The notes: a model not told the origin generated them from the sequence alone. Shown: positions 22,530-62,410, counted from the stretch's first letter. The stretch: 64,000 bases of DNA from IMGVR_UViG_3300046808_001241:153183-217182; one strand, 5' to 3'. A program made the numbers and translations.

Positions 22530-22537
22530 GTTAGTAT

Positions 22538-23917: not shown

Positions 23918-23921
23918 AATG

Positions 23922-25310: not shown

Positions 25311-25318
25311 GTGTATAT

Positions 25319-47735: not shown

Positions 47736-47777
47736 TTTGTTGACTAGTTTTAAAACTTAAACTATTATATCAAAATT

Positions 47778-47837
47778 ATGTTGCTGACCGATATACTACT
47801 AATCGTAATTGTTATTATTCTGCTCGTCCGTCGATGA
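47778..47837 (+). CDS. 19-aa hydrophobic micropeptide
   Basis: MLLTDILLIVIVIILLVRR; behind TTGACT-17-TATTAT; ATGA overlap with next gene. Confidence 0.45.
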   Translation: MLLTDILLIVIVIILLVRR

Positions 47838-48070
47838 AGGTCAAAGAACTCATTCAAAAGCTATCCAAATTCGATCCAGAAATGCGAGTGGTCGTTGATG
47901 GATACGAATGTGGCTATGACGAAGTTGATAAGATTAGAACAGTTCGCATTACTCCAAATCCTAAAGCAAAAGAAAAGGATTGGGAAGGAGAGTTCGAATT
48001 TGTTATTGACGGAGATAAGGAAGAGTCTCGACAACTAGAGCTTGCTTTGTATCTTCCGAGAAAATCATAA
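47834..48070 (+). CDS. Small conserved phage protein
   Basis: MKVKELIQKLSKFDPEMRVVVDGYE.GY. Confidence 0.75.
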   Translation: MKVKELIQKLSKFDPEMRVVVDGYECGYDEVDKIRTVRITPNPKAKEKDWEGEFEFVIDGDKEESRQLELALYLPRKS

Positions 48071-48165
48071 GTATGGAGATGTTGAGCTCCAAAACACTAT
48101 CCTTAATCATTGTTGTAGCTACATTCTTTTTAGTAGTGCTGTTTGATTTGCTTTGCCAATAAACG

Positions 48166-48197
48166 AAAAAGCTCCCAAGAGTTACCAAGGGAGCTTT
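48166..48197. terminator. Bidirectional terminator
   Basis: A5-GCTCCC...GGGAGC-TTT; related to 59614-59648. Confidence 0.7.
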
Positions 48198-48217
48198 AAC
48201 TTTAACAATAAACTGAA

Positions 48218-48532
48218 TTAGACTTCTTCAGAAGCTACTGGAATAAGAGCAGCTGCTTCTTCCATAGAAATGACTTCTACTTGCGAGAAGAGATCGGTAT
48301 CCAAGAGACCAAAGCCTTGAGCATAGAGACCTCCAGGTTGGATCTCAGTAAGAAGATCTGCGCAAAGCATAAATCGACCATCTGTAAGTTCTACTGGAGA
48401 AGCTTTATGCTTAGATTGAAAGGTTTCTTGAGTGGACTCTAGAATGTTTTTGAGAGAAGAATTAAGGATCAAAGCCAAAGACTTAAGTTCTTCGTATGAT
48501 TTGTTTTGTTGGATGAGTTCTTGTAAGTTCAT
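48218..48532 (-). CDS. Cassette 1 gene B (ASEEV family)
   Basis: ASPVELTDGRFMLCADLLTE; close paralog of 54080-54394. Confidence 0.8.
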   Translation of the reverse strand: MNLQELIQQNKSYEELKSLALILNSSLKNILESTQETFQSKHKASPVELTDGRFMLCADLLTEIQPGGLYAQGFGLLDTDLFSQVEVISMEEAAALIPVASEEV

Positions 48533-48543
48533 AATAAGAAAGA

Positions 48544-49371
48544 TTAGATTGCTGCTTGGATTGCTGTCATGAGGTTTGTTACTCTAGTGTCGAGGAGGGC
48601 GAGGTCGATGGACTCGCCGATGGAGTAAAAGGAGAGGCGGGAATTGCTGTATGTAGTAGCCCCGTTTGTTCGGTAAACAAAAATTTCTGCGGATAAAGGC
48701 TCAACAGAGGTTCTTGTTAGAGTGTGAGAGCCTTGTTTTGCTCTGAAAATATAATTTAAATTATTGTTTCGGCTTAGTCCTAAAAGACCAGTGGCATCCC
48801 CTTTTGATGAAATGGTATCATAGGTGGTGGCGGGGTTTCGGCTTCTCGTAGTCAGGTTTTGAGTTGCGGAGCTTCTGACAAAGTATGTCTGTCCGCTGTT
48901 TGAATTTCCTGCTCCAATATAGGCAGGCCCACCAATTGTTTGCGCGGTCGTTGCATAAACGCTTAAATGCTGGTTATCTTGCGGGTCGGCGTTGTTATTT
49001 CGCCGAGAGTTTAAATACTTAGTTGAGCCGTTTCCGATCAAACCTGTTTCTCGATTATAATCATCAGAAACAAAGTTAAAATTGGTAGGAGCAGCTCCAA
49101 CAAGAGGAACCAAAGCTCCGTTTAATGTCCTTGCTCCAGCAAGAATGCAAGATGCTTTTAAAGAGTTCCAAATACCATCAGACTTACATCCAATGATAAA
49201 AGAATCAATTGCTTGCTTAACAGGATCTTCCAAAGAAGCTCCGTCAGCAGCCTCTACTGCAGAGATATAAGCTGCAGCATTTGCATCAGATACCGAATAA
49301 CCAGCAGGACCGGTTTCAAATATAGTTTTACCTTGTATTTTTGTGTTACCTTGTAGTTTAATTAGTGCCAT
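48544..49371 (-). CDS. Cassette 1 gene A, putative virion accessory protein
   Basis: AYISAVEAADG...KASCILAGARTLNGALVPL; paralog of 54406-55218. Confidence 0.8.
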   Translation of the reverse strand: MALIKLQGNTKIQGKTIFETGPAGYSVSDANAAAYISAVEAADGASLEDPVKQAIDSFIIGCKSDGIWNSLKASCILAGARTLNGALVPLVGAAPTNFNFVSDDYNRETGLIGNGSTKYLNSRRNNNADPQDNQHLSVYATTAQTIGGPAYIGAGNSNSGQTYFVRSSATQNLTTRSRNPATTYDTISSKGDATGLLGLSRNNNLNYIFRAKQGSHTLTRTSVEPLSAEIFVYRTNGATTYSNSRLSFYSIGESIDLALLDTRVTNLMTAIQAAI

Positions 49372-49430
49372 ATGTGGGATTTATTTATCAAAAAAAACAA
49401 ATTTTCAAACCTTGCATAAATAATTTCCTC

Positions 49431-50417
49431 ATGAATATTTTAATTACTGGGGGATTAGGCTTTATTGGTTCAAATTTTATTGAGTTAATCATTAATAAAC
49501 CGGAAGTAACCTGTGTTGTTAATATTGATTGTCCTTCTAGGCTTTCCGCTGCAGCAGACACAGAAAACTGTAAACAATTTAAAGAAAATCCAAAATACCA
49601 ATTCCATGACATTTGGTTGGAGCACTTGGACGTAAAGTTAAACATTGATAGATTCAAACAAATTATCGAAACCAACGAGATTACACACATTGTTCACTTT
49701 GCCGCAGAATCGCATGTTGATAATTCCATAACAGGTCCCAGACAGTTTGTATTGTCAAACATTATGGGAACGTTTAATCTTTTAGAGCTTTGCAGACAGT
49801 TTTATCCAACGATTCGTTTCCATCACATTTCTACCGATGAAGTTTATGGAAGCTTAGGAGAATTTGGAGCATTCACAGAAGAAACTCCTTATGATCCTTC
49901 TTCCCCATATTCAGCTTCTAAGGCAGCTTCGGACCATCTTGTAAGAGCTTATTTTAGAACATACAAGCTCCCAGTTACTATTTCAAATTGTTCAAACAAC
50001 TATGGACCAAACCAACATTTGGAAAAGTTCATGCCAGTTGTTATTAGTTCCATTTTAAACAATAAAAAAATTCCTGTCTATGGAACTGGATCAAACGTTA
50101 GAGATTGGATATATGTCGAAGACCATTGTGAAGCAGTTTGGAATGTTCTAATCAAAGGCAAACTTGGAGAATCATATAACATTGGAGGAAATTGTGAAAA
50201 ACAAAACCTAGAAATTATTACTGAAATATGCAAGCAAATGGATAAAGATCCGAATGACTTTATCGTATTTGTAGAAGACAGAAAAGGTCATGATTACAGA
50301 TATGCCATTGACAATATCAAATATTTGAGTACTATTGGAGAGAAACCAAAAACATCTTTTGAAGAAGGTGTTCAAAAAACAATTCAATATTATGAAAACC
50401 GAATACTACACACCTGA
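49431..50417 (+). CDS. rfbB: dTDP-glucose 4,6-dehydratase
   Basis: ILITGGLGFIGSNF, HFAAESHVD, STDEVYG, YSASK, NNYGP, RDWIYVEDH; start reassigned to 49431. Confidence 0.92.
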   Translation: MNILITGGLGFIGSNFIELIINKPEVTCVVNIDCPSRLSAAADTENCKQFKENPKYQFHDIWLEHLDVKLNIDRFKQIIETNEITHIVHFAAESHVDNSITGPRQFVLSNIMGTFNLLELCRQFYPTIRFHHISTDEVYGSLGEFGAFTEETPYDPSSPYSASKAASDHLVRAYFRTYKLPVTISNCSNNYGPNQHLEKFMPVVISSILNNKKIPVYGTGSNVRDWIYVEDHCEAVWNVLIKGKLGESYNIGGNCEKQNLEIITEICKQMDKDPNDFIVFVEDRKGHDYRYAIDNIKYLSTIGEKPKTSFEEGVQKTIQYYENRILHT

Positions 50418-50649
50418 TGGCCAACATCCCGATGATGCTATTGCGAACGTAAAAAACTTCATTAACGAACTATCAAACGTTCAAGAACAATACTTCAACA
50501 AGCTTGTAGAGGATTTGCGATTGACAGATGAAGGAGCTGATTGGTTGTTTGATTACATCTACAACTCCGGAGAAGATGGCAAGTATCTGACCTTTGAAGA
50601 GCATATGTCATTTTACAAGAAGACCTACGACGAGCTCGTTGAACAATGA
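50392..50649 (+). CDS. Small hypothetical protein
   Basis: MKTEYYTPDG...; phage-like codon usage. Confidence 0.65.
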   Translation: MKTEYYTPDGQHPDDAIANVKNFINELSNVQEQYFNKLVEDLRLTDEGADWLFDYIYNSGEDGKYLTFEEHMSFYKKTYDELVEQ

Positions 50650-50801
50650 AACGAGAACTCCTCAAACAAAAGATCCAAATGCTTAAACAGGATTTAGCAA
50701 TGATAACAGAAGATTCCATTGCTTTTGAGAATCTTAAGATGGAGTTGAACTATTACGAAAATCAGCTAAGGTTGATGGATGAAGCTGCTAAAAACATTTA
50801 G
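50646..50801 (+). CDS. Small coiled-coil protein (not in track)
   Basis: MKRELLKQKIQMLKQDL..., 51 aa, ATGA overlap. Confidence 0.55.
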   Translation: MKRELLKQKIQMLKQDLAMITEDSIAFENLKMELNYYENQLRLMDEAAKNI

Positions 50802-51339
50802 AGAATACATTTATAGAAAGTATCACATTTGGGACGCTTTGGACTTGCTTCCTTATCGTTTCCGAATGTATTATTACGATCACTTTAAGCCAATCTTTTT
50901 TCCAAAACACAAAAAGGTTCGTGCTGCTGTTCCCAGGACTTGGGCAGATATTACTTCAATGATTGTTGATGTAAACTTTGCAATGATTAAAGAATTTTAT
51001 GAGGATGAATATCTTGATGGAATGGTTGATTGGGAAGGCTCCAGTGAGGGTCATAAGAAGTTCGAACAATGGCTGAAAGAAGCTTATGTGTATGCAGCTC
51101 ATAAACGTCCTTCATTAGAAGCAGAACGAGACAATTCTTATCCTCCATCAAGACCTTTTGATGAATGGTTCGAAGAAAAGACTGATGAGAAAGGAAGAAG
51201 AGTCCTTCAAATGAAAGACGATGGAGTTCCTTATGAAGTAAAGTATAAAGATGTCATTCGTCTCGACAAAAAAATTGAAGAGAACGATACAAAGTTTCTC
51301 AAAGAAATGATTGAATATAGGGAGTACTTTTGGACATGA
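50779..51339 (+). CDS. Hypothetical protein
   Basis: 186 aa ORF in co-oriented cluster. Confidence 0.75.
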   Translation: MKLLKTFREYIYRKYHIWDALDLLPYRFRMYYYDHFKPIFFPKHKKVRAAVPRTWADITSMIVDVNFAMIKEFYEDEYLDGMVDWEGSSEGHKKFEQWLKEAYVYAAHKRPSLEAERDNSYPPSRPFDEWFEEKTDEKGRRVLQMKDDGVPYEVKYKDVIRLDKKIEENDTKFLKEMIEYREYFWT

Positions 51340-51569
51340 AAATTTTTAAAGACTGGAAAGAGAATGACATTGCATCGTTTGTAATGTTTCTTGCAAAAGA
51401 AGCACAAAGACAAAAGAGAAGGATGAGGTATTATCATCAACGTTTCATGAAAGACGGAGAAGTCAATTCAATGAACATATATCAAATTCAACAAGGACAA
51501 GCTGTAGAAGCTGATACGTTGTTTATTATTGCCAAAGAACATTTTAATTTTGGTAAAAGGAAGTCCTAA
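51330..51569 (+). CDS. Small hypothetical protein
   Basis: ORF in co-oriented cluster. Confidence 0.6.
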   Translation: MDMKIFKDWKENDIASFVMFLAKEAQRQKRRMRYYHQRFMKDGEVNSMNIYQIQQGQAVEADTLFIIAKEHFNFGKRKS

Positions 51570-51651
51570 TTATATGAATGGGATTTCTGATCGATTTTTT
51601 GATATATCTGTTGTTTCTTAGTTGACCCGTCCTTCTTAAGAGGAGATCGTA

Positions 51652-51915
51652 TTGTTAATGGAAGAACACAAACCTCTAAAAGTTGATGGGTTCGATGACT
51701 GCATTGTTGGTCTTGTTGAACGATTTGGAATGGATCCAGTCTTTTGTTATGACAAGCAGAAGATCGTCGCGAAGATTATGACAGAGGAAGGTATTCATTT
51801 CGAGCAAGCTATCGAGCACTTTGAGTACAACATCGTCGGTTCATGGGTTGGTAAAGGCACACCTTGCTTTTTGACAAGACATATTGATTGTTGCCTTGTC
51901 CATCACGAGGACTGA
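51652..51915 (+). CDS. Conserved small phage protein
   Basis: DGFDDCIVG...FEYNIVGSWVGKGTPCF. Confidence 0.75.
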   Translation: MLMEEHKPLKVDGFDDCIVGLVERFGMDPVFCYDKQKIVAKIMTEEGIHFEQAIEHFEYNIVGSWVGKGTPCFLTRHIDCCLVHHED

Positions 51916-51926
51916 TAGTATCCATA

Positions 51927-52259
51927 ATGAAGGCTAAGAAAGATGAATTTGTATATTTGGTTTACTGCAACAAGGAACCGATTGTTTATGGATGCTATAA
52001 ATCAAAGCATGATGCTGTGCGCTATGCTGTTACTCTAATTCGCTACAGAAAGAATTTAGCAAAAGAACGGAATCAGACGTTTGGTTATTATCATTTTTTG
52101 CCTTTGTTGCAACCATCTCAAATTAAGTGGATGAATGATCCAGATAGTCCATGCTACAGTGATTTGTTAATCTTTTCAGCTTGTCTAATGGGAGAAAAGA
52201 AAGAGGAATGGAGTGACGATGGTTGTCAGGTTAAAGTAGTGAGAAGGATTTTGAGTTGA
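51927..52259 (+). CDS. Hypothetical protein
   Basis: Start at MKAKK, 7 nt after TTGCCT-17-GATAGT. Confidence 0.7.
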   Translation: MKAKKDEFVYLVYCNKEPIVYGCYKSKHDAVRYAVTLIRYRKNLAKERNQTFGYYHFLPLLQPSQIKWMNDPDSPCYSDLLIFSACLMGEKKEEWSDDGCQVKVVRRILS

Positions 52260-52290
52260 CCAGTCCGCTTAGTTGAAGGAATATATCAAT

Positions 52291-52554
52291 ATGAGAAACA
52301 AATTAACTACTGAGACTTTTTTAGATAAAGCATTCGATAAACTATTTCAAGCTGTTGGTTTTGAGAAATGGGATAGAGAGTTTACAAAGCAAGACAGTTG
52401 GTATATGCAAAAGACTTGGACCACTGATCAATCAAATGAATATAAGAAGTGGTTTCTTACAGAAGTTAAAAAAGATTTGAAGCTTAAAAAAACTCAAGCT
52501 GAAAAAGAATGGAATTGGTTCAACCTTATGTGGGGTTGGAAAGAACAAAATTGA
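52291..52554 (+). CDS. Hypothetical Trp-rich protein
   Basis: Start at MRNKL, 6 nt after TTGACC-17-GAATAT. Confidence 0.7.
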   Translation: MRNKLTTETFLDKAFDKLFQAVGFEKWDREFTKQDSWYMQKTWTTDQSNEYKKWFLTEVKKDLKLKKTQAEKEWNWFNLMWGWKEQN

Positions 52555-52556
52555 TT

Positions 52557-52823
52557 ATGTTAAAATTTATCAAATCCCTTTATAAACGTTATAGAAATCG
52601 TTCTGTAATGAAAGAATATCTCGAGGAGCTTAAAAAGGATAACTCCTTTTATTACACGGATGAAGATGCTTTCTATGAACTTGAAAAAAGACTACAACAT
52701 TTTGAAGTAGGACGGAATACAAACTCATTTGTTGTTGATCTTCCAGAAGAAATACCTGAATCGATTGTTGGCGATGATAAAGCAAGCTTTGTGTCATACA
52801 ACGGAGTTCGGTATCACAAATAA
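52557..52823 (+). CDS. Hypothetical protein
   Basis: MLKFIKSL... Confidence 0.6.
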   Translation: MLKFIKSLYKRYRNRSVMKEYLEELKKDNSFYYTDEDAFYELEKRLQHFEVGRNTNSFVVDLPEEIPESIVGDDKASFVSYNGVRYHK

Positions 52824-52830
52824 AACTAAT

Positions 52831-53085
52831 ATGTACTGTAAAAATTGTGCCGATCAAATCGAACCAGAGCGTCTCGAAATTCTACCAGCAACTGTCTTTT
52901 GTTCAAGCTGTGCCAGGACTTTGAATGTGGTCAAACCTCGAAAAGGAATTATGGTTTGGCATTCGAAAGATTGTGCTGAATTGCAAACAATGTCTGCAGA
53001 TTATTTTGAGAAAAATCGAGACTACTTTACTCCCAATGGAACCAGGAGTGTAATGAAAACCTTTTTTTCGAAAGAAACTTACTAA
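52831..53085 (+). CDS. DksA/TraR-type C4 zinc finger protein
   Basis: MYCKNCADQIEPERLEILPATVFCSSCA. Confidence 0.8.
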   Translation: MYCKNCADQIEPERLEILPATVFCSSCARTLNVVKPRKGIMVWHSKDCAELQTMSADYFEKNRDYFTPNGTRSVMKTFFSKETY

Positions 53086-53089
53086 AACT

Positions 53090-53257
53090 ATGAAAGAAAA
53101 ACACTACATCAAGCAACTGGAAGACAAAGCGTTTGAGTTAGTTCAAATGCTAACTGATAATTCATTGTATAGTTTTTTGTCAGATAGGGAACGCAAGCAA
53201 GTGGGTCAGATTCTTCGAGACATTAGCCAAGCAAAGACCGAATATCAGACTGCTTAA
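53090..53257 (+). CDS. Small hypothetical protein (not in track)
   Basis: MKEKHYIKQLEDKAF..., 55 aa, fills the gap. Confidence 0.55.
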   Translation: MKEKHYIKQLEDKAFELVQMLTDNSLYSFLSDRERKQVGQILRDISQAKTEYQTA

Positions 53258-53273
53258 ATGATTAAGTAAGTGA

Positions 53274-53672
53274 ATGAAGTCAAAAGACCAAATTCTTTTA
53301 GAAAATGCATACGCTCGTACCTATGGAATCAGAAATGTAAAAGATTCTGAAGTAGAGCAAATGATTGAAGCTCTTAATAAGATTCAATCTCAAGTAAGTG
53401 TTATGCATCATGGTCAACTTACAAATCTTAAACAACATCTCGAGAGTGTTGTTGGTAAGATCGACAGTCGTCTGACTTCAAGCAAGACAACAAAAGATCT
53501 TGCAGACAAACATGGAGTTTCTGTTGAAGAGATCGAAGCCCAACTCGAAAAGGGAGTTAAGGTTGAGATGGAGCATACAAAGAACACAGACTCTGCTCGT
53601 AAGATTGCTCTTGATCATCTTGCAGAAGTTCCAAACTATTACGACAAGCTTGCTCAAGTAGAAGCAAAGTAA
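53274..53672 (+). CDS. DUF5661-like protein
   Basis: QLEKGVKVEMEHT...KIALDHLAEVPNYYDKL. Confidence 0.75.
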   Translation: MKSKDQILLENAYARTYGIRNVKDSEVEQMIEALNKIQSQVSVMHHGQLTNLKQHLESVVGKIDSRLTSSKTTKDLADKHGVSVEEIEAQLEKGVKVEMEHTKNTDSARKIALDHLAEVPNYYDKLAQVEAK

Positions 53673-53673
53673 T

Positions 53674-54036
53674 ATGAAATTTGATTTGCTTGTTGAATCG
53701 TTCCTTAAGGGAGTCAAAGACGATCCAGAAGATCTCAAACTTTTTATTGAAAAGCGTTCAGCAGGAGCAAAGAAGATTGCAGAATCCACAGAGAAGAAAG
53801 GAAAGTATGCAACGCTTACTGCTATTCACTTTAAAGCAAAAGAGATTCCTTATAACCAAGCTTTAAAGCATTGGAATGATGAAGATTCAAAGTTTATTGA
53901 ACAGAAATCAGACGAATGCTTTGATAAGCTAAAGAATTGGAAAAATATGTCTCAGCGAGAGTTTCAGCATGTGATGGGACAGCTAGAAGCTTACGGAGAG
54001 GTTTTCATCCGTTCCGTCGAGACTAAACAAAAATAA
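53674..54036 (+). CDS. Hypothetical protein, possibly head-packaged
   Basis: N-terminus MKFDLLVE. Confidence 0.7.
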   Translation: MKFDLLVESFLKGVKDDPEDLKLFIEKRSAGAKKIAESTEKKGKYATLTAIHFKAKEIPYNQALKHWNDEDSKFIEQKSDECFDKLKNWKNMSQREFQHVMGQLEAYGEVFIRSVETKQK

Positions 54037-54063
54037 AAAAAAGCCCTCCGAAGAGGGCTTCTT
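54036..54063. terminator. Bidirectional terminator
   Basis: A-run, AAGCCCTC CGAA GAGGGCTT, cttt. Confidence 0.75.
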
Positions 54064-54079
54064 TATCTAGCACTAATTG

Positions 54080-54394
54080 TTAGACTTCTTCAGAAGCTAC
54101 TGGTAGAAGAGCAGAAGCTTCTTCCATTGTAATAACAGATACTTGTGTAAAGAGGTCTGTGTCAAGGAGACCAAACCCTTGAGCGTAGAGCCCCTTTTGT
54201 CCAATTTCTGTTAAGAGATCTGCGCAGAGCATGTAAGAGCCATCGGTAAGCTCTACTGGAGATGCCTTATGCTTTGATTCAAGAGTAGCTTGAGTTGATT
54301 CCAAGATGTTTTTAAGATTTACATCAAAGACTAAAGCTAGATCTTTAAGCTCTTCGTATGATTTATTTTGTTGAATGAGTTCGAGTAGGTTCAT
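54080..54394 (-). CDS. Cassette 2 gene B (ASEEV family)
   Basis: Close paralog of 48218-48532. Confidence 0.8.
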   Translation of the reverse strand: MNLLELIQQNKSYEELKDLALVFDVNLKNILESTQATLESKHKASPVELTDGSYMLCADLLTEIGQKGLYAQGFGLLDTDLFTQVSVITMEEASALLPVASEEV

Positions 54395-54405
54395 AGTATT
54401 AAAGA

Positions 54406-55218
54406 TTAGATTGCGGCTGCGAGGGCGGTCATGAGGTCAGAGACGCGGGTGTCAAGGAGCGCAAGGTTAAGGGATTCGCCGATGGAGTAAAAGTTTAAAC
54501 GACTGTTGGTTGGGCCGTTTAACGCTCCATTATATGATCTAGCAAAAACAAATAAATTGGTGGAAGACGGAGCCGAGCTTGCCGCGGCGCTAGTCCCCGT
54601 GCTTTTTAGATATCTCATTTGTGTAGTTGTTGGTCCAGATCTGGAAGCACCAATAAAACCAACAGGATAATTTCCAACATTTACTGCTTGCCAACTAGCC
54701 GCACGTACTATAAAACCTGTATTTGCAATGATGTGAGAAGTAGAACCTCCGCTAGCGACACTTGCACCAAATAGATACCCATCTGTTCCAACAATGCTAG
54801 TCGAGTGTTTATTTACAGCCATATGAAAATTGTCTTGTGGATCGGCGTTGTTTGCTCTGTTAGAATTTAAATATTTCGTTGAACCATTGCCTTTAAGTCC
54901 TGTCTCGCGGTTATAATCTGCGGAGACAAAATTAAAATTGGTTGGGGCAGTTCCAACAAGAGGAACCAAAGCTCCATTCAATGTCCTTGCTCCAGCAAGA
55001 ATACAAGAAGCTTTTAAAGAGTTCCAAATACCATCAGACTTACATCCGACAATAAAGTTTTCAATAGCAATCTTAACAGGATCTTCAAGAGTAGCTCCAT
55101 CAGCAGCCTCTACTGCAGAGATATAAGCTGCAGCGTTTGCATCGGATACCGAATAACCAGTATCGAAAATAGTTTTACCTTGAATGTTTGTTTTACCGAG
55201 TAGTTTGATCATTGACAT
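54406..55218 (-). CDS. Cassette 2 gene A
   Basis: Paralog of 48544-49371; start reassigned to MSMIKL. Confidence 0.8.
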   Translation of the reverse strand: MSMIKLLGKTNIQGKTIFDTGYSVSDANAAAYISAVEAADGATLEDPVKIAIENFIVGCKSDGIWNSLKASCILAGARTLNGALVPLVGTAPTNFNFVSADYNRETGLKGNGSTKYLNSNRANNADPQDNFHMAVNKHSTSIVGTDGYLFGASVASGGSTSHIIANTGFIVRAASWQAVNVGNYPVGFIGASRSGPTTTQMRYLKSTGTSAAASSAPSSTNLFVFARSYNGALNGPTNSRLNFYSIGESLNLALLDTRVSDLMTALAAAI

Positions 55219-55251
55219 ATGGGACTTATTTATCAAAAAAAAACAAATTTT

Positions 55252-56145
55252 CTAACCTCTTACGAAAAATTCTTTAAAACTTTCAGAGGTTTGTGTGCGA
55301 GCTCGTAAACTAGCCATTGTATCTTTGGGTCCCAGCATCTTTTGAGCGGTAAGTTGAGAACCTTTCAATACTTCATCAGAGATTCCATACTTCTTTGGAT
55401 CCAAGCCATGTTTCGTTAACAGTTTCTTTAGCTGCACTCGAATCTTTTCTTTGTCTGGTCCAGTTGACATATGAAGTTGTTTGATCAGCTCCACGATTTC
55501 CTTTTCATGTGGTTGGAGTTCTTTTACCTCTGCAGTCGAAGATGCTTTGTAGTAACCATCTTCTAACGGACTTTCGATAAGAATGTCATCTTCTGGAACG
55601 TTTGGATAAACATGCTTGGCAAATGGAATGATATATTTGTCTAATATTTCTTGTTGAGTATCCCAAATGGAAACGACGACATTGTTCTTGATCTTCCACA
55701 TTCTTCCGAGCTTGTAGTGATCTGCAGTTTCGATATTATATTTCGTATAGACCGTGAAGTTTGGATACTTCTTTTCTAGTTGTTCGAAGTAGCTGTCCAA
55801 GTCTTTATCTGGAGAGAAGAACCGAACTCCGAGTTCTTTCAAGCTATTATAATCAAATTCAAGATGACCCAAGAGTTCAAAGAAGTTTGTGTGAGAAGTA
55901 GCGTGCTCCCCTTCTTCTCCAATGTCTTTAGAAACAACGCACAGGCCAAGCTTTGAATCAAACGAATTGATTTCGTCCTTATCTTTGTTCCATGGATTTA
56001 AATGATCAGGAACAATAAGAAGTTCATCAACAATGAATGTGATTGGATTTCCTTCCTGTTCATCATAGGCATAGTATTCATCTTCGAACTTAATAGTGTC
56101 CGGAGATTCGAACAATACATTCCTAACAATCTGGTTAAAATCCAT
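55252..56145 (-). CDS. Hypothetical acidic protein, possibly head-packaged
   Basis: Start MDFNQIVRNVLFE, 5 nt after TATAAATA. Confidence 0.75.
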   Translation of the reverse strand: MDFNQIVRNVLFESPDTIKFEDEYYAYDEQEGNPITFIVDELLIVPDHLNPWNKDKDEINSFDSKLGLCVVSKDIGEEGEHATSHTNFFELLGHLEFDYNSLKELGVRFFSPDKDLDSYFEQLEKKYPNFTVYTKYNIETADHYKLGRMWKIKNNVVVSIWDTQQEILDKYIIPFAKHVYPNVPEDDILIESPLEDGYYKASSTAEVKELQPHEKEIVELIKQLHMSTGPDKEKIRVQLKKLLTKHGLDPKKYGISDEVLKGSQLTAQKMLGPKDTMASLRARTQTSESFKEFFVRG

Positions 56146-56167
56146 AGGATTATTTATAAGTACTTGG
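56146..56167. promoter_or_regulatory. 22-bp bidirectional late promoter
   Basis: CAT-aggat-TATTTATAAGTA-cttgg-GTG: TATAAATA (-) and TATAAGTA (+) share a central TATA. Confidence 0.7.
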
Positions 56168-57064
56168 GTGAAGTTCGACCAGTTCAGTACAATTATATTA
56201 GAAGCTAAGTTCCGACAAAGTTCTAAGCAATTGGTGGAACAGGTCAAGAAGATTGCTTCCATCTATTTTAATCGATATAATTCAAATAACGTTAATATAA
56301 AAGAACTGATTGAGCAGGATAAAATCGCTTCATTCAAGGACAACAAGCATTACAAAGAGTACTTTGATTACTTTGAGCTTAAGAAGATGCCGAAGTACTT
56401 TACTCCTTCGGATAATTTATTAGCAACTGTGACAATAACTGACTTGGAAACAAAGGAACCCAAGAAAATTGATGTTTATTGCATATATGGAGACATTGGA
56501 GATACTGACTATGCAGCTTATGGACATGAATATAATTCAATCAATATCTATGACAATAACATAAAAGGTCTTTCCGAACGTCTTGTTCAATCAAAGATCC
56601 TTCATGAACTCACACATGGGTTTCAACAACATAAAGAGCAAACAAAGAAGTTCCAACAAATGATTGGAAAGGATAAAGTATTTGATTGGGAAACGTACTT
56701 TAAAGAACCAATCGAGTTTGACGCCCATCTGAACGAAATTGCATACAATATCAATCAAAAGCACAGAGAGTTCTTGAAGGGTATCATGGCAACAAAAGAA
56801 CTTCCAATCAAAAAATTGCTGAAGATGAGACTGGAAACGTTCATGAAAGAATTGAAAGTCTTTATTCAGGCTCCGCTTGAAGCATATACAGAACTGAAAG
56901 AACTTCCTTTACCGAAGTGGACCGAATCATTCCAAGACTTTATTTCTACAATTAAGACCAACAAGAAGCTTTGGAATAAATTTAAGTTAAAGCTCCAGAA
57001 CCTTTATAATGATTTAGAAAAGAAGAGTGTTAGAATCATGCAGAGAAATTCCCTTATAAGCTGA
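56168..57064 (+). CDS. HExxH zinc metallopeptidase-like protein
   Basis: ILHELTHGFQ followed by Y...P.EFDAH; GTG start (MKFDQFSTIILE). Confidence 0.7.
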   Translation: MKFDQFSTIILEAKFRQSSKQLVEQVKKIASIYFNRYNSNNVNIKELIEQDKIASFKDNKHYKEYFDYFELKKMPKYFTPSDNLLATVTITDLETKEPKKIDVYCIYGDIGDTDYAAYGHEYNSINIYDNNIKGLSERLVQSKILHELTHGFQQHKEQTKKFQQMIGKDKVFDWETYFKEPIEFDAHLNEIAYNINQKHREFLKGIMATKELPIKKLLKMRLETFMKELKVFIQAPLEAYTELKELPLPKWTESFQDFISTIKTNKKLWNKFKLKLQNLYNDLEKKSVRIMQRNSLIS

Positions 57065-57104
57065 ATAATCTGCTTGATTGTTGTCTGGATTCATAAGTAA
57101 TAGA

Positions 57105-57380
57105 ATGAGATCCGCTTGCAGAAATTTTGTACAAAGATTACAAAAACATAGAACGATTGCTTTGCCGCCGAAGCACGAATTGTTTCACAGACAAACAACT
57201 ACATCAATAGCTCAACCAATTAACTATCTACCAGAAGAAAATTTTACATTCAATCTTTCCAATTCAACCGATACAGACGGAGACGGTTATACAGACGAAG
57301 TAGAAACACTAGCAGGGACAGACATTAATGATTCAGCAGACTTTCCTGTTTCCCTTTTTAATGTATTCAATGGAGTTTAA
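57105..57380 (+). CDS. Small protein with Ca-binding DTDGDG repeat
   Basis: TDTDGDGYTDEVETLAGTD; CATAAGTA 5 nt upstream of ATG. Confidence 0.6.
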   Translation: MRSACRNFVQRLQKHRTIALPPKHELFHRQTTTSIAQPINYLPEENFTFNLSNSTDTDGDGYTDEVETLAGTDINDSADFPVSLFNVFNGV

Positions 57381-57382
57381 AC

Positions 57383-58861
57383 ATGCAGAATAAAATTCAA
57401 TTAAACAATACCGGAACATTTACAAAGCAGAATTCTGTAAGTTTTGATCCATCATTGTGGGCAGCAACTAACGGAACGATCAATTGGTCGTCAGTGCCAG
57501 ACGAGACCCCATATACAGAAGCCGATGTCTTTCATACTCAGCTTACACACACCCCAGCAACGAGTGCAGATATTGGTTGGACGATAAGAGTTGGTAAAGG
57601 AGGACAGCTTTATTATATCGATTTAGAAGGTTTGGGACAAATAATATGCCCTAATAGATCATTTTCCCCTTGGAATGATGATTGCATGACAACAACTGTT
57701 TATAGTTCTGATGTCGTTGATACCGATGATGAATTAAAGGTTGGATCCTATAACGACAATTGGGTTAATGGTTATATTCACGGTTCTGGTATGTATGTCA
57801 AACCTCACATGGATCCGCTAAACAATAAAGCATTTTTTAATCCGATCTTGCACGAAGAGTTTAATGGTAGCGACAGAAGTTATTCGATTATTAACTGGGG
57901 TCTTGTTCCAAAGCCTTCCATTAATCGCGGAGATGTATTATTTTATTCCAGATATAGAGATATTGGCAATGGAGTTCTGGAAATTACATTCTATTGCTAT
58001 AATTTTGGAAACAGAGTTTATGATTTTGCAGAAACTCCATGGTGGGCTGTGCGACCCAGCAGATTTCCAAATATGGTTGAAGGAATAAATGGAACGTCGT
58101 CGTTTAAAGTAAATAACAGAGTATTTGGAACCGGTTCAATCCCACCCAAAGGAGGTTGGGGAGCACATACAGTCAATCCTTCGGATCCAAATTCAATAGC
58201 ATGTGCATTAGTTTGGGGTTCAACGAGCACGGGAATGGGTGTAAATTTTGGAGTAGTTAATACTGGAGAAAGAGACATGGCTTTAATTGCTCCATCGAAA
58301 TCGGTCTTTTCGATGCCGTACGGTACAGGAATTAGATATAGAAGGTATTGCGTTTTTGGAAAGCTATCAAACGTTGCAGATATATGTTCAAAATTAGATC
58401 AATATTCATTCTTTGAAGAAATAGAATTTCCTGAAACAAATTCAGGTAAGCTTCCTCTATACAACGGACTTGCAGAAGGACAAACGATTTTATCAAAAAC
58501 TCCGAACGGTTCGCCAGTTTGTTATACATATCCAATTCCTGTTAAAGATTCCTTGCCTTTGTTATTAATGAAGAACAAATCAACCAATACATATTTCTTA
58601 ACAACCGATCCGTATGCTGCTTGCAATAAAGATCCTTTTACAAATCCTTATCCAGTTGGTCATCCAAAATATGCAACGTATCAAAATAGACACGTTTATC
58701 AAGTCTATGATGACAATTCAGAATGGATTTCATTGCTTGGTTTCGTAAAAATAATTGATAGTCCGCTTCTTCCTGGTTTCGTACCGTTGTCGGATGTCGT
58801 TTCCACTCCTTTTGTTACTGGAGAAAAGACACCAGCGGGCCAACTAATGGTAATGGTTTAG
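57383..58861 (+). CDS. Large beta-rich hypothetical protein (possibly glycan-related)
   Basis: 492 aa; W.IRVGKGGQLY start suggests a galactose-mutarotase-like beta sandwich (weak). Confidence 0.7.
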   Translation: MQNKIQLNNTGTFTKQNSVSFDPSLWAATNGTINWSSVPDETPYTEADVFHTQLTHTPATSADIGWTIRVGKGGQLYYIDLEGLGQIICPNRSFSPWNDDCMTTTVYSSDVVDTDDELKVGSYNDNWVNGYIHGSGMYVKPHMDPLNNKAFFNPILHEEFNGSDRSYSIINWGLVPKPSINRGDVLFYSRYRDIGNGVLEITFYCYNFGNRVYDFAETPWWAVRPSRFPNMVEGINGTSSFKVNNRVFGTGSIPPKGGWGAHTVNPSDPNSIACALVWGSTSTGMGVNFGVVNTGERDMALIAPSKSVFSMPYGTGIRYRRYCVFGKLSNVADICSKLDQYSFFEEIEFPETNSGKLPLYNGLAEGQTILSKTPNGSPVCYTYPIPVKDSLPLLLMKNKSTNTYFLTTDPYAACNKDPFTNPYPVGHPKYATYQNRHVYQVYDDNSEWISLLGFVKIIDSPLLPGFVPLSDVVSTPFVTGEKTPAGQLMVMV

Positions 58862-58895
58862 AATTGACCTGCAAAATTCCCTTATAAATAGAATT

Positions 58896-59225
58896 CTAAT
58901 GCAGTTTCCCAAACCAATAAGCAGCATCAGCGACAACGTCTGGATTGATCTTCTTGTAGTCTCCCAGATGACCAAAATGAAGATGGTGGTTGCAAGACTT
59001 GATTCCTTCGCATAATGTAATCAAATTGGTTGGATCCAGTTCTTTAGAAGGATCGGCAGAAAAAGAGATAATATGGTGGATTTCCAATTTCTTTGTTCCT
59101 CCACATACTGCACAAGTTGGAAACATTTGCAGATGCTTCTTCCTAACCGCTGGCCACTTGGAAGAACGCTTGGAACCAACCTTGGCTTTTCCTTGAATAA
59201 CGTCCTTTATGTGCTTTAGGATCAC
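58896..59225 (-). CDS. Small HNH endonuclease
   Basis: CAVCG...EIHHI...NLITLC...HHL.FGH. Confidence 0.85.
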   Translation of the reverse strand: MILKHIKDVIQGKAKVGSKRSSKWPAVRKKHLQMFPTCAVCGGTKKLEIHHIISFSADPSKELDPTNLITLCEGIKSCNHHLHFGHLGDYKKINPDVVADAAYWFGKLH

Positions 59226-59238
59226 AACAGTATTTAGT

Positions 59239-59472
59239 TTAGATGGTCTTCTTCAGGCGATCGTCCTGCCTCTTGATTTCTTCCAGATAATGAATGAGGA
59301 TCTTAATATCCTGATCTTTCATGTAGATCTCTTTGCCAGCTCGTTCTAAAGCCCGGCCAGCTTCATTCATCCTCTTCTTATACTCATCAGCAACAAATCC
59401 ATCATAATATAAGCCGACTCCAATTGCTCCGAAACATATTCCCAAAAGCCAGCTTGAAATGATATCCTTCAC
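59239..59472 (-). CDS. Small membrane-anchored coiled-coil protein
   Basis: N-terminal TM segment followed by coiled coil. Confidence 0.65.
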   Translation of the reverse strand: MKDIISSWLLGICFGAIGVGLYYDGFVADEYKKRMNEAGRALERAGKEIYMKDQDIKILIHYLEEIKRQDDRLKKTI

Positions 59473-59489
59473 AACAACTAATTAAGATT

Positions 59490-59615
59490 ATGACTGCAGA
59501 AGAACTACAGGAAGAAAACAAAGAACTTAAAGAACAAATCGAAGAACTAAAACAAATTATAGATAGCCTTCGAAACGTTACAGCAACAAACAACCTGAAG
59601 ACCTTTGGAAATTAA
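59490..59615 (+). CDS. 41-aa coiled-coil peptide (not in track)
   Basis: MTAEELQEENKELKEQIEELK...; 5 nt after palindromic TAATTA, terminator follows. Confidence 0.6.
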   Translation: MTAEELQEENKELKEQIEELKQIIDSLRNVTATNNLKTFGN

Positions 59616-59648
59616 AAAAGCTCCCAAAGACTAGCTAAGGGAGCTTTT
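59614..59648. terminator. Bidirectional terminator
   Basis: A6-GCTCCC...GGGAGC-TTTT. Confidence 0.7.
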
Positions 59649-59664
59649 GTTAGGAGAGAAGAGC

Positions 59665-59919
59665 TTAAACTTCCTCAGAAGCTACTGGAAGGAGAGCCTC
59701 ATACTGTTCTTGAGTAAGTTCATCACAAGCCTCAGCAGCAAACCTCTGAGCAATTGGTTCGATAGCTGCAATTAAGCAGCAACCATCTTCTGCCTTTGTT
59801 GCTTCTGCTGCGGGAGTAAACCATGTAGAAGCATGATTATTAGGATAACCAGACTCTGCATCCATAGCAAGTCTAATTGTTTCGTATTTATCGGGCATGA
59901 TTTTGAAGTATTTGTTCAT
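59665..59919 (-). CDS. Cassette 3 gene B (unrelated body, LLPVASEEV end)
   Basis: Shares only the C-terminal ~9 codons with cassette 1/2 gene B. Confidence 0.75.
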   Translation of the reverse strand: MNKYFKIMPDKYETIRLAMDAESGYPNNHASTWFTPAAEATKAEDGCCLIAAIEPIAQRFAAEACDELTQEQYEALLPVASEEV

Positions 59920-59928
59920 ATGATTTTA

Positions 59929-60744
59929 TTAGTAAAGGTTCCACTTATTGTTGAGGTATAATTCAACTCCTTGTCGTTGGGATGTCGTTAATACCGAGTT
60001 GTAGATAATCACCTCTGCAATATCTCCATTTAGGTAATCTGGGGCGTAGGTGTCGCCGCCGAGGGAGGTCACGGCTGAGTTGGTGTCTGGAGTGCTCCCG
60101 GCAGTCTGGAATCCCCCCACTCGATCTGTTCCCGCTCCGTTTTTGTACGCAGTAAGAGCAGCGGATCCGTAGTTGTGAACTGATCCAGCAAGCACCCATT
60201 CGTTGGTAGACATGCTCGCAGCTTTCACAAATTGGTATCCATTACTATCAAGGCGACGGCCACCGGCTTCTATGGTGGTGGTCAGGTAGATTGTGGCGCG
60301 TGTAGTGTTGGATAACCCACCTATGCTGTTATGAATAATAGCTTGAGAACCAGATAATGCTTTTGCAGTTTTGCAAACAGCGAACATTGTTAGGCCGGTT
60401 GTGTTGCGTACAATCGGACTGGACGAAAGAGTCAAGATGTCGTTTGATCCGTCGAATCTTAAAACGTTTTTGCCGTTTTTAATCCCGGTTTTTAAAATCG
60501 GCCTTGCATTGGCAGTGTCTTGCGTTAAGTGACGAGCGTTTCCGGATTTATCTTCAATCCGAGCCACAGCAGATCCATCAGTAGTAACTAATGATCCTCC
60601 AACAGTAGAATCATAAAGCGTATTAGAATCTGCAGCATCCAACCAAAGCTGCAGCCCTGAAATGTCTGAAGGCGTTTGCGGACCAGTATCGAATATAGTT
60701 TTGCCTTGAATGTTTGTTTTACCGAGTAGTTTAATTAGTGACAT
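59929..60744 (-). CDS. Cassette 3 gene A, LamG/concanavalin-like domain protein
   Basis: LQLWLDAAD, LRFDGSND, YLNGDIAEVIIYNSVL...VELYLNNKW; first 21 aa shared with cassettes 1/2. Confidence 0.8.
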   Translation of the reverse strand: MSLIKLLGKTNIQGKTIFDTGPQTPSDISGLQLWLDAADSNTLYDSTVGGSLVTTDGSAVARIEDKSGNARHLTQDTANARPILKTGIKNGKNVLRFDGSNDILTLSSSPIVRNTTGLTMFAVCKTAKALSGSQAIIHNSIGGLSNTTRATIYLTTTIEAGGRRLDSNGYQFVKAASMSTNEWVLAGSVHNYGSAALTAYKNGAGTDRVGGFQTAGSTPDTNSAVTSLGGDTYAPDYLNGDIAEVIIYNSVLTTSQRQGVELYLNNKWNLY

Positions 60745-61103
60745 ATGTGCCTTTTATTTATCCAATTCATTTTTTTTTTGCCTATGAATAAAGAAAAATT
60801 TATAAGACCAACCCATAAAATAATACACGAGAATTTTAAACGATTTCCCGTAGCTAGAATAATAATAAAATAATATCAAAAATAGTAATATAATCTCCAG
60901 AGCAGAGCCCAATTAGCTAAAAATTAATAAAAATTCCCCTGATAACCTTACAGAAATATATTACCAGAATTTTTCCGTAGAAATTTAATAAGTTCTCGAC
61001 GCTAGAAAAGATAAAAAAATAATAACAAAATTGTCCAATAAATTCCGCTTAGCAAATAAAAGAATACTTGTCCTGTCCAATGCTTCAGGAGAGACTAATA
61101 AAG

Positions 61104-61712
61104 ATGAAGACACAAGCACAAGAGATAGCTTCTTATATCCAAGAAGAGTACGAGAAAGAACTCAACAAGAGGAATTCTGAGGAATGTTCACGAAGTGAAG
61201 AGAATTCGCGTAGCAGTGACCAGATCAAAGAGAATTCGCGTAGCAGTGCAGAGATCTCTACAGATACTGAGAAATTGTCACGAAGTGAGAGGAATTCCGG
61301 AGAGTACTTTAGAGACAGTAAGCAGGCCCATACAAAGGCTTCTCTCAACATTCGGATAAACAATCTCCAATTCCGCTCTACGAGCCAATCTTCTGGAGAG
61401 TTCATCAAGTGGTCTGTCAATCCTCTTCACAACAATCTCCTCTCTTACCTGGACAATGGCTGGGAAGATCATGGAGATCGTATTACTAAGTCTCATTGCT
61501 CTATGCAGAAGTCTCTCTTCAGTCTTCCAGAGACTTGTATAGTTATTGGTTGGCTAACAGTTTGTCCAGATGAGAATTGTTGTGATCTCTCTTCTGTAGG
61601 TCCTCGGATTCTTGAGTTGTCTCTCTCTGAAAGGAATGACTTCTTTGAGGTCTATACTCTAGCTGAAACTAAACTTCTTACTCTCTCTAATGAATCAGAA
61701 AACGAAAATTGA
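61104..61712 (+). CDS. Hypothetical protein with Ser/Arg/Glu repeats
   Basis: ATG 7 nt after TTGTCC-17-GAGACT; ENSRSS repeated. Confidence 0.5.
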   Translation: MKTQAQEIASYIQEEYEKELNKRNSEECSRSEENSRSSDQIKENSRSSAEISTDTEKLSRSERNSGEYFRDSKQAHTKASLNIRINNLQFRSTSQSSGEFIKWSVNPLHNNLLSYLDNGWEDHGDRITKSHCSMQKSLFSLPETCIVIGWLTVCPDENCCDLSSVGPRILELSLSERNDFFEVYTLAETKLLTLSNESENEN

Positions 61713-62336: not shown

Positions 62337-62410
62337 GCAGTATTAGTTTAATGGTAGAACGGAGCTCTTCCAAAGCCCAGACGAGAGTTCGATTCTCTCA
62401 TGCTGCACCA
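62337..62410 (+). tRNA. tRNA-Gly(TCC)
   Basis: GCAGTAT/ATGCTGC acceptor stem, D arm GTTT..GAAC, loop CTTCCAA, T arm GAGAG-TTCGATT-CTCTC, encoded CCA; one A-C mismatch in the anticodon stem. Confidence 0.92.

What the first reader, a model, noticed from the sequence alone, without database searches (positions are those of the whole stretch)
48166..60770. Three minus-strand two-gene cassettes with conserved ends and swapped interiors
Seen in sequence: units at ~48166-49406, ~54036-55252 and ~59614-60770 each read GATAAATA, gene A starting M[AS][LM]IKL[QL]G.T.IQGKTIF[ED]TG, gene B ending [LI]PVASEEV, then a terminator. Units 1 and 2 are paralogous and share an upstream ~26 bp; their gene A middles diverge and look more GC-rich. 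Unit 3 keeps only the first ~21 and last ~9 codons around an unrelated LamG-like gene and partner. All interrupt plus-strand regions. Inference: short homology arms allow payload exchange, or the N-terminal peptide is a virion-docking tag for interchangeable glycan-binding decorations.
Basis: partly seen in the sequence, partly recalled or inferred. Interest (0 to 1): 0.6.

Follow-up and report, generated by a model that had tools for sequence, protein, structure and literature searches.

The report
Swappable lectin-gene cassettes in a phage
A large T4-like freshwater phage carries three self-contained late-gene cassettes: each has the same 21-residue N-terminal peptide and the same short 3' end, but a different lectin-fold protein and partner between them, and related phages show these interiors being exchanged, as in receptor-binding tail proteins of other phages.

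Summary
Three minus-strand units each consist of a GATAAATA motif, gene A (270-275 aa), gene B (84-104 aa) and a terminator. They are the only three copies of this 21-residue N-terminal tag in the 217-kb genome.

GATAAATA is this phage's T4-type late-promoter motif, so the units are autonomous late transcription units.

The A1/A2 and A3 bodies show no sequence homology, but both fold as ConA-like/LamG beta-sandwiches. Both resemble the solved tail protein gp15 of cyanopodophage Pan3. The B subtype always follows the A body type.

In metagenomes, at least six alternative N-terminal tags occur on both body families. Tags track phage lineage, not body.

At the locus syntenic with unit 3, a related phage keeps the promoter+tag arm and the B-tail+terminator arm. 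Between them it carries a family-1/B1 interior instead of LamG/B3. The other two loci are empty or differently filled in relatives.

Best reading: these are exchangeable late virion lectin-like proteins, probably on the tail. They would be docked by a lineage-specific N-terminal peptide, each with a cognate partner, and shuffled by recombination in the conserved ends. Docking, location and ligand are inferred, not shown.

The parts
49382..49389 (-). U1 late-promoter-type motif GATAAATA, 10 nt before the A1 ATG
   Evidence: NATAAATA occurs 74 times in the genome, and 42 copies lie within 40 nt upstream of an ATG
48544..49371 (-). A1, 275 aa. Residues 1-21 are the tag (49309-49371). The body is family 1 (phrog_17104): helical N-part, ConA-like beta-sandwich, C-terminal helix
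48218..48532 (-). B1, 104 aa, B1-type partner. The conserved acidic tail is the last 9 codons (48218-48247)
48160..48197 (-). U1 intrinsic terminator (9-bp GC-rich stem plus U run); the stem sequence is nearly the same as in U3
55227..55234 (-). U2 late-promoter-type motif GATAAATA, 8 nt before the A2 ATG
54406..55218 (-). A2, 270 aa. The tag is 55156-55218; family-1 body, paralog of A1 with a hypervariable core
54080..54394 (-). B2, 104 aa, B1-type partner (81% identical to B1)
54027..54064 (-). U2 intrinsic terminator
60755..60762 (-). U3 late-promoter-type motif GATAAATA, 10 nt before the A3 ATG
59929..60744 (-). A3, 271 aa. The tag is 60682-60744; the body is LamG (Pfam Laminin_G_3, phrog_10356 'virion structural protein')
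59665..59919 (-). B3, 84 aa, B3-type partner, a distant homolog of B1/B2 with the same last 9 residues
59610..59648 (-). U3 intrinsic terminator. A contig of a related strain departs from the window at 59609
49390..49425 (.). Upstream segment shared by U1 and U2 (81% over 36 nt). In U1 it also holds the divergent CATAAATA motif of the rmlB gene

Best explanation
Each unit is an autonomous late transcription unit: a T4-type late promoter, gene A, gene B and a terminator.

A is a small virion protein with a ConA-like/LamG lectin fold. It is probably an accessory receptor-binding or adhesion module on the tail. Its first ~21 residues would be a lineage-specific docking peptide that plugs the body into a fixed socket of this phage's virion. 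The rest of A is an exchangeable head.

B is a small acidic partner that co-varies with the head type. It is most likely an assembly chaperone or co-subunit.

Both ends are kept constant within a lineage: the promoter+tag at the 5' end and the B tail+terminator at the 3' end. They therefore also act as short homology arms, and recombination between arms replaces, adds or removes interiors.

Shown here: the anatomy, the late-promoter motif, the fold class, tag/body reassortment, the B/body co-variation and the interior replacement at a syntenic locus.

Inferred: virion incorporation, the docking role of the tag, tail location, sugar binding, the role of B, and homologous recombination as the mechanism of exchange.
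For: Late unit:
- NATAAATA is under-represented genome-wide (74 seen against ~139 expected).
- 42 of the 74 copies sit within 40 nt, mostly 5-10 nt, before an ATG. These include the prohead protease gene and all three units.
- The genome has a T4 gp21-type protease and a gp55-like ORF.
- NATAAATA is the reported late promoter of T4-like cyanophages (PMC2984593).
- All three units have terminators.

Structural role:
- Family-1 homologs lie in the tail-fibre modules of S-CBWM1, S-CBS4 and KBS-S-2A.
- A3 matches phrog_10356 'virion structural protein'. RefSeq names its isolate homologs virion structural proteins.
- A3 (Foldseek E 7e-9, TM 0.60) and A1 (Z 9.6, 212 residues aligned) both resemble PDB 9vyh tailspike gp15 of Pan3. 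That is a 270-aa protein encoded right after the tail spike gene.
- The family-1 fold also occurs as a domain of long collagen-repeat and Ig-like phage proteins.

Tag:
- The tag is low-confidence and unstructured in the monomer models.
- At least six tag classes occur on both body families.
- Two related siphoviruses carry the same tag on different bodies.
- Tag class follows the phage backbone and GC content.

B:
- The B subtype matches the A body in all 15 distinct loci examined.

Exchange:
Against: There is no proteomic, structural or binding evidence for these proteins. The socket is unidentified.

The similarity to Pan3 gp15 is fold-level only (hhalign probability under 1%), and ConA-like folds are common.

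Most family-1 homologs have no B gene nearby: more than 6000 A-family hits against 133 B hits, and no B in S-CBS4 or KBS-S-2A. B is therefore not generally required.

The B tail does not co-vary strictly with the tag.

The arms are short and 78-93% identical, so homologous recombination through them is plausible but not demonstrated.
Confidence: 0.55

Rival explanations
1. The conserved ends are only regulatory and recombination modules, a late-gene counterpart of PeSLs. On this reading the 21 codons are conserved for expression of near-leaderless late mRNAs or as a recombination substrate, and the peptide has no docking role.
For: The arms include the promoter and the terminator. The ATG lies 8-10 nt after the motif, so the transcripts would be nearly leaderless. 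Exchange is bounded by the arms.
Against: About 40 other genes share the motif and spacing but not the tag. The copies differ at synonymous sites while the peptide is kept. The tag is conserved as a peptide in distant metagenomic relatives, and quite different peptide tags behave the same way in other lineages.
Confidence: 0.15
2. A is a capsid decoration displayed on the head. The tag would dock it onto the major capsid protein rather than the tail.
For: Lectin and Ig-like decorations on T4-like heads are known (own knowledge). The tag docking logic would be the same. No test here locates the protein.
Against: Homologs in smaller phages lie in tail-fibre modules next to tail fibre or tail spike genes. 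The nearest solved analogue is a tail component. The fold is fused to collagen-like fibre proteins.
Confidence: 0.12
3. A and B are non-structural late proteins, for example a surface-acting or exclusion factor with an immunity-like partner. The tag would serve another purpose.
For: A two-gene unit with a small acidic second protein, moron-like insertion, and no proteomic evidence.
Against: There is no signal peptide or membrane segment in the sequences. The promoter is of late type. Homologs sit in the tail modules of other phages, and some are annotated as virion proteins.
Confidence: 0.1
4. The tag is a T4-type capsid-targeting propeptide. It would deliver A into the prohead and be removed by the gp21-like protease.
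For: The genome encodes Peptidase_S77. The tag is N-terminal and about 20 residues long. A1 ends its tag with I-F-E, which resembles the T4 cleavage pattern (own knowledge).
Against: A2 and A3 have Asp at that place, and many tagged relatives have neither Asp nor Glu there. The same bodies occur in tail modules of sipho- and podoviruses. A lectin fold inside the head has no obvious use.
Confidence: 0.05

Closest known systems
Conserved N-terminal docking peptide of secondary receptor-binding proteins in branched RBP systems (Klebsiella phage KP32 RBP2; PMC13352976)
   Same: A short N-terminal peptide (29 aa in KP32 RBP2) is kept constant while the rest of the protein is exchangeable. In KP32 it is necessary for incorporation into the virion and can carry a foreign head. 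Here a 21-aa peptide is constant on sequence-unrelated heads.
   Different: There is no sequence similarity. Here the heads are small lectin-fold proteins rather than beta-helix depolymerases. The genes are dispersed in three separate late units instead of sitting beside the primary RBP. The socket is unknown, and nothing was tested experimentally.
[quoted passage not shown]
   Same: Short conserved promoter and terminator elements in variable regions of T4-like genomes mark the junctions of insertions, deletions and replacements between close relatives. The same pattern appears here between the window and L024, L012, L015 and L021.
   Different: PeSLs are non-coding, carry sigma-70-type early promoters and flank early ORFans. 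Here the 5' arm is a late-promoter motif plus 21 codons, and the 3' arm is 10 codons plus a terminator. The payload is a late protein pair.
Pan3 tailspike gp15 (PDB 9vyh; Hou et al., Structure 2026, cited in PMC13730344)
   Same: A ~270-aa ConA-like/LamG protein that is part of a cyanophage tail and is encoded just after the tail spike gene. Both A3 and A1 models align over almost its whole length.
   Different: The similarity is fold-level only. Pan3 has a different N-terminus and no B-like gene, and it is a small podovirus. I could not read the paper.
Receptor-binding protein plus downstream assembly chaperone pairs (e.g. Pam3 tail fibre and chaperone, PMC9608196; T4 and lambda Tfa-type proteins, own knowledge)
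   Same: A small gene lies immediately downstream of the binding protein, and its type follows the type of the distal domain.
   Different: B matches no known chaperone family. B is absent next to most family-1 homologs. Its conserved acidic C-terminal tail has no described counterpart.
Morons of lambdoid phages (own knowledge)
   Same: A self-contained promoter-gene-terminator unit, inserted between other genes, often on the other strand, with deviating base composition, and present or absent among relatives.
   Different: Morons are typically expressed from the prophage and benefit the host. These units carry a late promoter and look like virion parts.

Membership tests
Pfam Laminin_G_3 / ConA-like lectin superfamily | Sequence match above the Pfam gathering score | tested here: met
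   A3 scores 35.2 bits against a 27.6 cut-off, residues 98-255. A1 and A2 have no Pfam match.
Pfam Laminin_G_3 / ConA-like lectin superfamily | Jelly-roll beta-sandwich fold | tested here: met
   A3 model (pLDDT 89): 429 PDB matches at E<=1e-3, all listed ones of this fold class. A1 model (pLDDT 84.5): Z 11.5 to 5hon, 180 residues at 3.5 A, plus many LamG, pentraxin and CBM40 chains.
PHROG 17104 (unknown function) | Profile match over the whole profile | tested here: met
   A1 E 5e-88 and A2 E 6e-85. The matches start at residue 16-24, so the tag lies outside the family profile.
T4-type late genes | NATAAATA/TATAAATA motif just upstream of the gene | tested here: met
   All three units have it. 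Genome-wide, 42 of 74 motifs lie within 40 nt upstream of an ATG.
T4-type late genes | Phage encodes the late sigma factor gp55 | tested here: inconclusive
   A 189-aa ORF matches T4 gp55 residues 46-124 at 34% identity, E 6e-5. The match is weak and partial. gp33 and gp45 were not sought.
T4-type late genes | Transcription starts at the motif late in infection | not testable with these tools
   Only assembled contigs of one metatranscriptome were available. They hold exact A3 contigs but cannot show starts or timing.
PeSL cassettes | Composite of a sigma-70-type early promoter and a stem-loop terminator | tested here: not met
   A terminator is present, but the promoter is the late-type motif. 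No sigma-70-like site is placed upstream of the A genes, and such sites in the region are no more frequent than in shuffles.
PeSL cassettes | Lies at the junctions of indels or replacements between related genomes | tested here: met
Docking-peptide RBPs (KP32 RBP2 type) | N-terminal peptide of 30 aa or less, conserved within a lineage on otherwise unrelated bodies | tested here: met
Docking-peptide RBPs (KP32 RBP2 type) | The peptide binds a branching domain of another virion protein and is needed for incorporation | not testable with these tools
   No partner was identified. Pfam and PHROG scans of neighbouring baseplate and late proteins gave no gp10-like domain.
Tail-fibre assembly chaperones | Membership of a described chaperone family | tested here: not met
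   B1-B3 have no match in Pfam, PHROGs, NCBIfam or PDB sequences.
Tail-fibre assembly chaperones | Encoded directly downstream of the binding protein and specific to its distal domain | tested here: met
   The B1-type always follows family-1 bodies and the B3-type always follows LamG bodies, in 15 distinct loci.
Tail-fibre assembly chaperones | Physical interaction with the binding protein | tested here: inconclusive
   The complex prediction gave no verdict.

The most novel reading that the evidence does not exclude
Aquatic phages of all three tail types may share a plug-and-socket system. A small repertoire of ~15-40-residue N-terminal peptides would define lineage-specific virion sockets, and lectin-fold heads, with their B partners where present, would be traded among lineages. 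In T4-like members the trade unit would be a late-gene cassette whose arms are half regulatory and half coding: promoter+tag, and B tail+terminator. That would be a late, structural-gene counterpart of PeSL shuffling, and it would let one phage carry several adhesins at once.
Probability: 0.35. Interest if true: 0.75.

Novelty: new variant of a known kind. Interest (0 to 1): 0.6.

Why it matters
If the tag is a docking peptide, it gives a sequence-readable rule for which proteins of uncultured aquatic phages are exchangeable adhesins. Both body families are very abundant in metagenomes: more than 6000 hits for family 1 and 434 hits for the LamG family.

It would also show that host-recognition modules can sit in dispersed late cassettes, outside the tail gene block. 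It extends promoter/terminator-mediated shuffling from early ORFans to structural genes. A 21-residue tag that accepts unrelated heads would also be a ready handle for engineering display on such phages.

Tried and rejected
Searches and tests that gave nothing:
- Megablast of 48000-61000 against isolate phages gave no match.
- Pfam, NCBIfam, PHROGs and PDB sequence searches gave nothing for B, and nothing beyond phrog_17104 for A1/A2.
- The protein-atlas look-up of B1 gave no usable hit, and the look-up for B3 did not complete.
- The complex prediction of A1 with B1 scored 0.88, 0.88 and 0.79, but one unrelated control scored 0.72. The verdict was 'no answer', so it is not used as evidence either way.
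- Profile-profile tests of family 1 vs LamG, and of either family vs Pan3 gp15, found no sequence homology.
- Scans of baseplate and late proteins in the window for a gp10-like socket found nothing.
- The Pan3 structure paper is not held.

Method problem:
- My gapped global nucleotide identities for unrelated segments (about 74% for the A1 vs A3 bodies) are an artefact of the scoring. I disregard them. I use only the values for the arms, which I counted by hand from the sequences one search printed, together with the ungapped repeats.

Ideas considered and rejected:
- Strict co-variation between the tag and the B tail. The same tag class occurs with different tails.
- A diversity-generating retroelement as the source of the A1/A2 hypervariable core. 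No template-like repeat of that segment appeared among the 20 largest repeat families shown for 47500-61500. No reverse transcriptase was looked for.
- Recent gene conversion as the reason for the identical ends. The arms carry synonymous differences, and between phages they diverge at about the rate of the flanking genes.
- The joints reported by read laying (55258 to 59665, and others). These are paralog cross-mapping of the U1 contig, not real rearrangements.


Full report
**Setting**

The window is the last 64 kb of a single 217,182-bp virus record with direct terminal repeats, rated complete. It is a distant member of the T4-like myoviruses:
- It has gp6- and gp25-type baseplate wedge proteins.
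- It has a T4 gp21-type prohead protease, Peptidase_S77, at 88.8 bits.
- It has a weak gp55-like ORF (E 6e-5).
- Its baseplate protein is only 22-23% identical to those of cyanomyoviruses.

No isolate phage matches the region at the DNA level. Its DNA occurs in freshwater metagenomes. One independent sample holds 55105-60669 letter for letter. The host is unknown.

**The observation**

Three minus-strand units have the same layout:
- the motif GATAAATA, followed 8-10 nt later by the ATG of gene A (270-275 aa);
- after a gap of about 10 nt, gene B (84-104 aa);
- then a stem-loop with a U run.

Repeats and their statistics:
- The first 21 residues of A are 17/22 identical between A1 and A3, and similarity stops there.
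- The last nine residues of B are the same in all three units apart from one L/I change.
- At the DNA level an 86-nt repeat (71-84%) and a 33-nt repeat (88-94%) occur in three copies each.
- A profile of the tag finds only these three ORFs in the genome.

First, B3 is a homolog of B1/B2: 35% identity over its whole length (E 1e-4), and it sits in one family alignment with shared invariant positions. Second, U2 and U3 have further minus-strand neighbours. A2 starts at 55218.

**GATAAATA is the late promoter**

NATAAATA occurs 74 times in the genome, fewer than the ~139 that base composition predicts. Of these, 42 lie within 40 nt upstream of a called ATG, mostly 5-10 nt. They include the prohead protease gene and a run of large late genes in the window.

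NATAAATA is the late promoter reported for T4-like cyanophages, close to T4's TATAAATA (PMC2984593). The units are therefore autonomous late transcription units. With so short a spacing, their mRNAs would be nearly leaderless; that is an inference.

A metatranscriptome holds exact contigs of A3 at the highest contig depth of the laid stretch. This fits expression but does not prove it.

**The A proteins**

A1 and A2 belong to phrog_17104 (unknown function), and the match begins after the tag. A3 is a Pfam Laminin_G_3 protein and matches phrog_10356, 'virion structural protein'.

Profile-profile comparison of the two families finds no homology (probability 0.3%). Yet both AlphaFold models are ConA-like/LamG beta-sandwiches that end in a long helix (pLDDT 84.5 and 89.4; the tags have low confidence).

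Both models align over nearly the full length of PDB 9vyh:
- A3: Foldseek E 7e-9, TM 0.60.
- A1: Z 9.6, 212 residues aligned.

I verified that 9vyh is Pan3 gp15, a 270-aa protein encoded right after the tail spike gene of that cyanopodophage. The resemblance is structural only.

Other evidence on the A bodies:
- The family-1 fold also appears as a domain of long collagen-repeat and Ig-like phage proteins.
- In isolates, family-1 and LamG homologs lie in tail-fibre neighbourhoods of cyanophages with myo-, sipho- and podovirus morphology.
- Matches to the lectin-like subdomain of clostridial neurotoxin binding domains are fold-class matches and nothing more.

The interiors are thus sequence-unrelated members of one broad fold class.

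**The tag is a module of its own**

I examined the best 120 metagenomic hits of each body family. N-termini fall into a small number of classes, and at least six classes occur on both families. They include this phage's class (18 and 18 proteins) and several quite different peptides.

The related siphoviruses S-CBS4 and KBS-S-2A carry three tag types each. One tag sits on a LamG body in one phage and on a family-1 body in the other.

Tag class follows the phage backbone. Low-GC T4-like contigs have this phage's class, and high-GC contigs have another. The three copies in the window differ at synonymous sites while keeping the peptide. About 40 other late genes share the promoter but not the tag.

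This is the pattern expected of a lineage-specific attachment peptide. The experimentally proven precedent is the 29-residue conserved peptide of Klebsiella phage KP32 RBP2. It is required for incorporation into the virion and can carry a foreign head (PMC13352976). Docking here is inferred; no socket was found.

**The B proteins**

B is a small family (133 hits against more than 6000 for family 1) with two subtypes. In all 15 distinct loci examined, the 104-aa subtype follows family-1 bodies and the 84-aa subtype follows LamG bodies.

The family ends in a hydrophobic L-L-P followed by a short acidic tail. In this genome and its close relatives, both subtypes carry the same tail. B fits no known family.

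Its position and its co-variation with the head are those of a cognate assembly chaperone or co-subunit. Most family-1 genes elsewhere lack a B gene. The complex prediction gave no verdict.

**Exchange**

Comparative evidence from relatives:
- Relative L024 (122.6-kb contig; 83% nucleotide identity in the neighbouring 492-aa gene) has one cassette at the locus syntenic with U3. Homology to the window runs through the upstream flank. It then covers the promoter and tag (86.6% over 82 nt, ending at codon 22).
- It resumes 30 nt before the B stop and runs through the terminator (90.5% over 84 nt).
- Between these arms L024 has a family-1 A and a B1-type B, where the window has LamG and B3.
- L012 combines a 5' arm closest to U1 (89% over 85 nt) with a U3-like interior and terminator.
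- The U2 position is unoccupied in L024.
- At the U1 position, L015 lacks the whole block 47834-50779.
- L021 has, directly after the same RadA-like gene, a LamG/B3 cassette in the other orientation.
- A contig of another strain departs from the window one base-step beyond the U3 terminator.

Within the window the parts are also mosaic:
- The tag DNA is closest between U2 and U3 (58/63).
- The bodies and the upstream DNA are closest between U1 and U2.
- The terminator stems are closest between U1 and U3.

This matches the logic of PeSL-mediated shuffling in T4-type phages (PMC2839356, PMC4122927). The differences are a late promoter, arms that are partly coding, and a structural payload. That recombination occurs through the arms is the simplest reading, but it is not demonstrated.

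**Verdict**

The finding is real and non-trivial. It is best filed as a new variant of two known principles combined: docking-peptide receptor-binding modules, and promoter/terminator-bounded cassette shuffling. The open points are location in the virion, the socket, the ligand and the role of B.

Noticed in passing
whole genome; in the window e.g. 22542, 23933, 25323, 27320 (minus strand): NATAAATA lies 5-10 nt before the ATG of about 40 genes. Late mRNAs of this phage would therefore be leaderless or nearly so. The motif is under-represented elsewhere in the genome.
   Followed up: partly
window 21153-27307 (-): Four tandem late paralogs (458, 459, 462 and 662 aa) share a ~40-residue N-terminus with a C-I-G-D-S-L ... 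I-N ... F motif. It is followed by repeated A-R-I-Y-D-P ... G-G-V-L-L-P-D-G-R-V-F units that look like a beta-propeller. The 662-aa protein shares only the N-terminal piece. This is a second 'same head piece, different body' set in this genome.
   Followed up: partly
window 48544-49371 vs 54406-55218: A1 and A2 are 95-100% identical over residues 61-120 but only 15-25% identical over residues 141-220. The same hypervariable core appears across the family alignment, as in the binding faces of receptor-binding proteins.
   Followed up: partly
window 58896-59225 (-); L024 19778-19989 and 13396-14637: An HNH endonuclease gene sits next to U3, and its homolog lies elsewhere in relative L024. L024 instead has an IS605 OrfB/TnpB-type gene beside the TSP3-repeat gene.
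   Followed up: no
window ~49431-50417 (+): A dTDP-glucose 4,6-dehydratase gene (TIGR01181, 410 bits) is transcribed divergently from A1. It has its own CATAAATA motif 8 nt before the ATG. The whole block 47834-50779 is missing in relative L015.
   Followed up: partly
window 59893-60602: A freshwater metatranscriptome run holds exact contigs of A3 at the highest contig depth of the 6-kb stretch laid. It also holds a contig closer to A1 across the A2 5' part. Contigs cannot show strand, ends or level.
   Followed up: partly
L004 6293-6643: In a 154-kb relative contig, a 116-aa ORF just upstream of the A/B cassette starts, from an internal Met, with a tag-like peptide on a third, small body. Longer A proteins (360-390 aa) with an extra domain between the tag and the LamG body are common in metagenomes.
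   Followed up: no
window 61174-61297: 30-nt and 90-nt direct repeats inside ORF 61068-61712 encode a serine/arginine/glutamate-rich repeat.
   Followed up: no
window 12015-13718 (+) and 14755-16404 (+): A 567-aa HNH/homing-endonuclease-like protein lies just upstream of the ribonucleotide reductase large subunit.
   Followed up: no
window 62337-62410 (+): A tRNA-Gly (TCC) gene.
   Followed up: no
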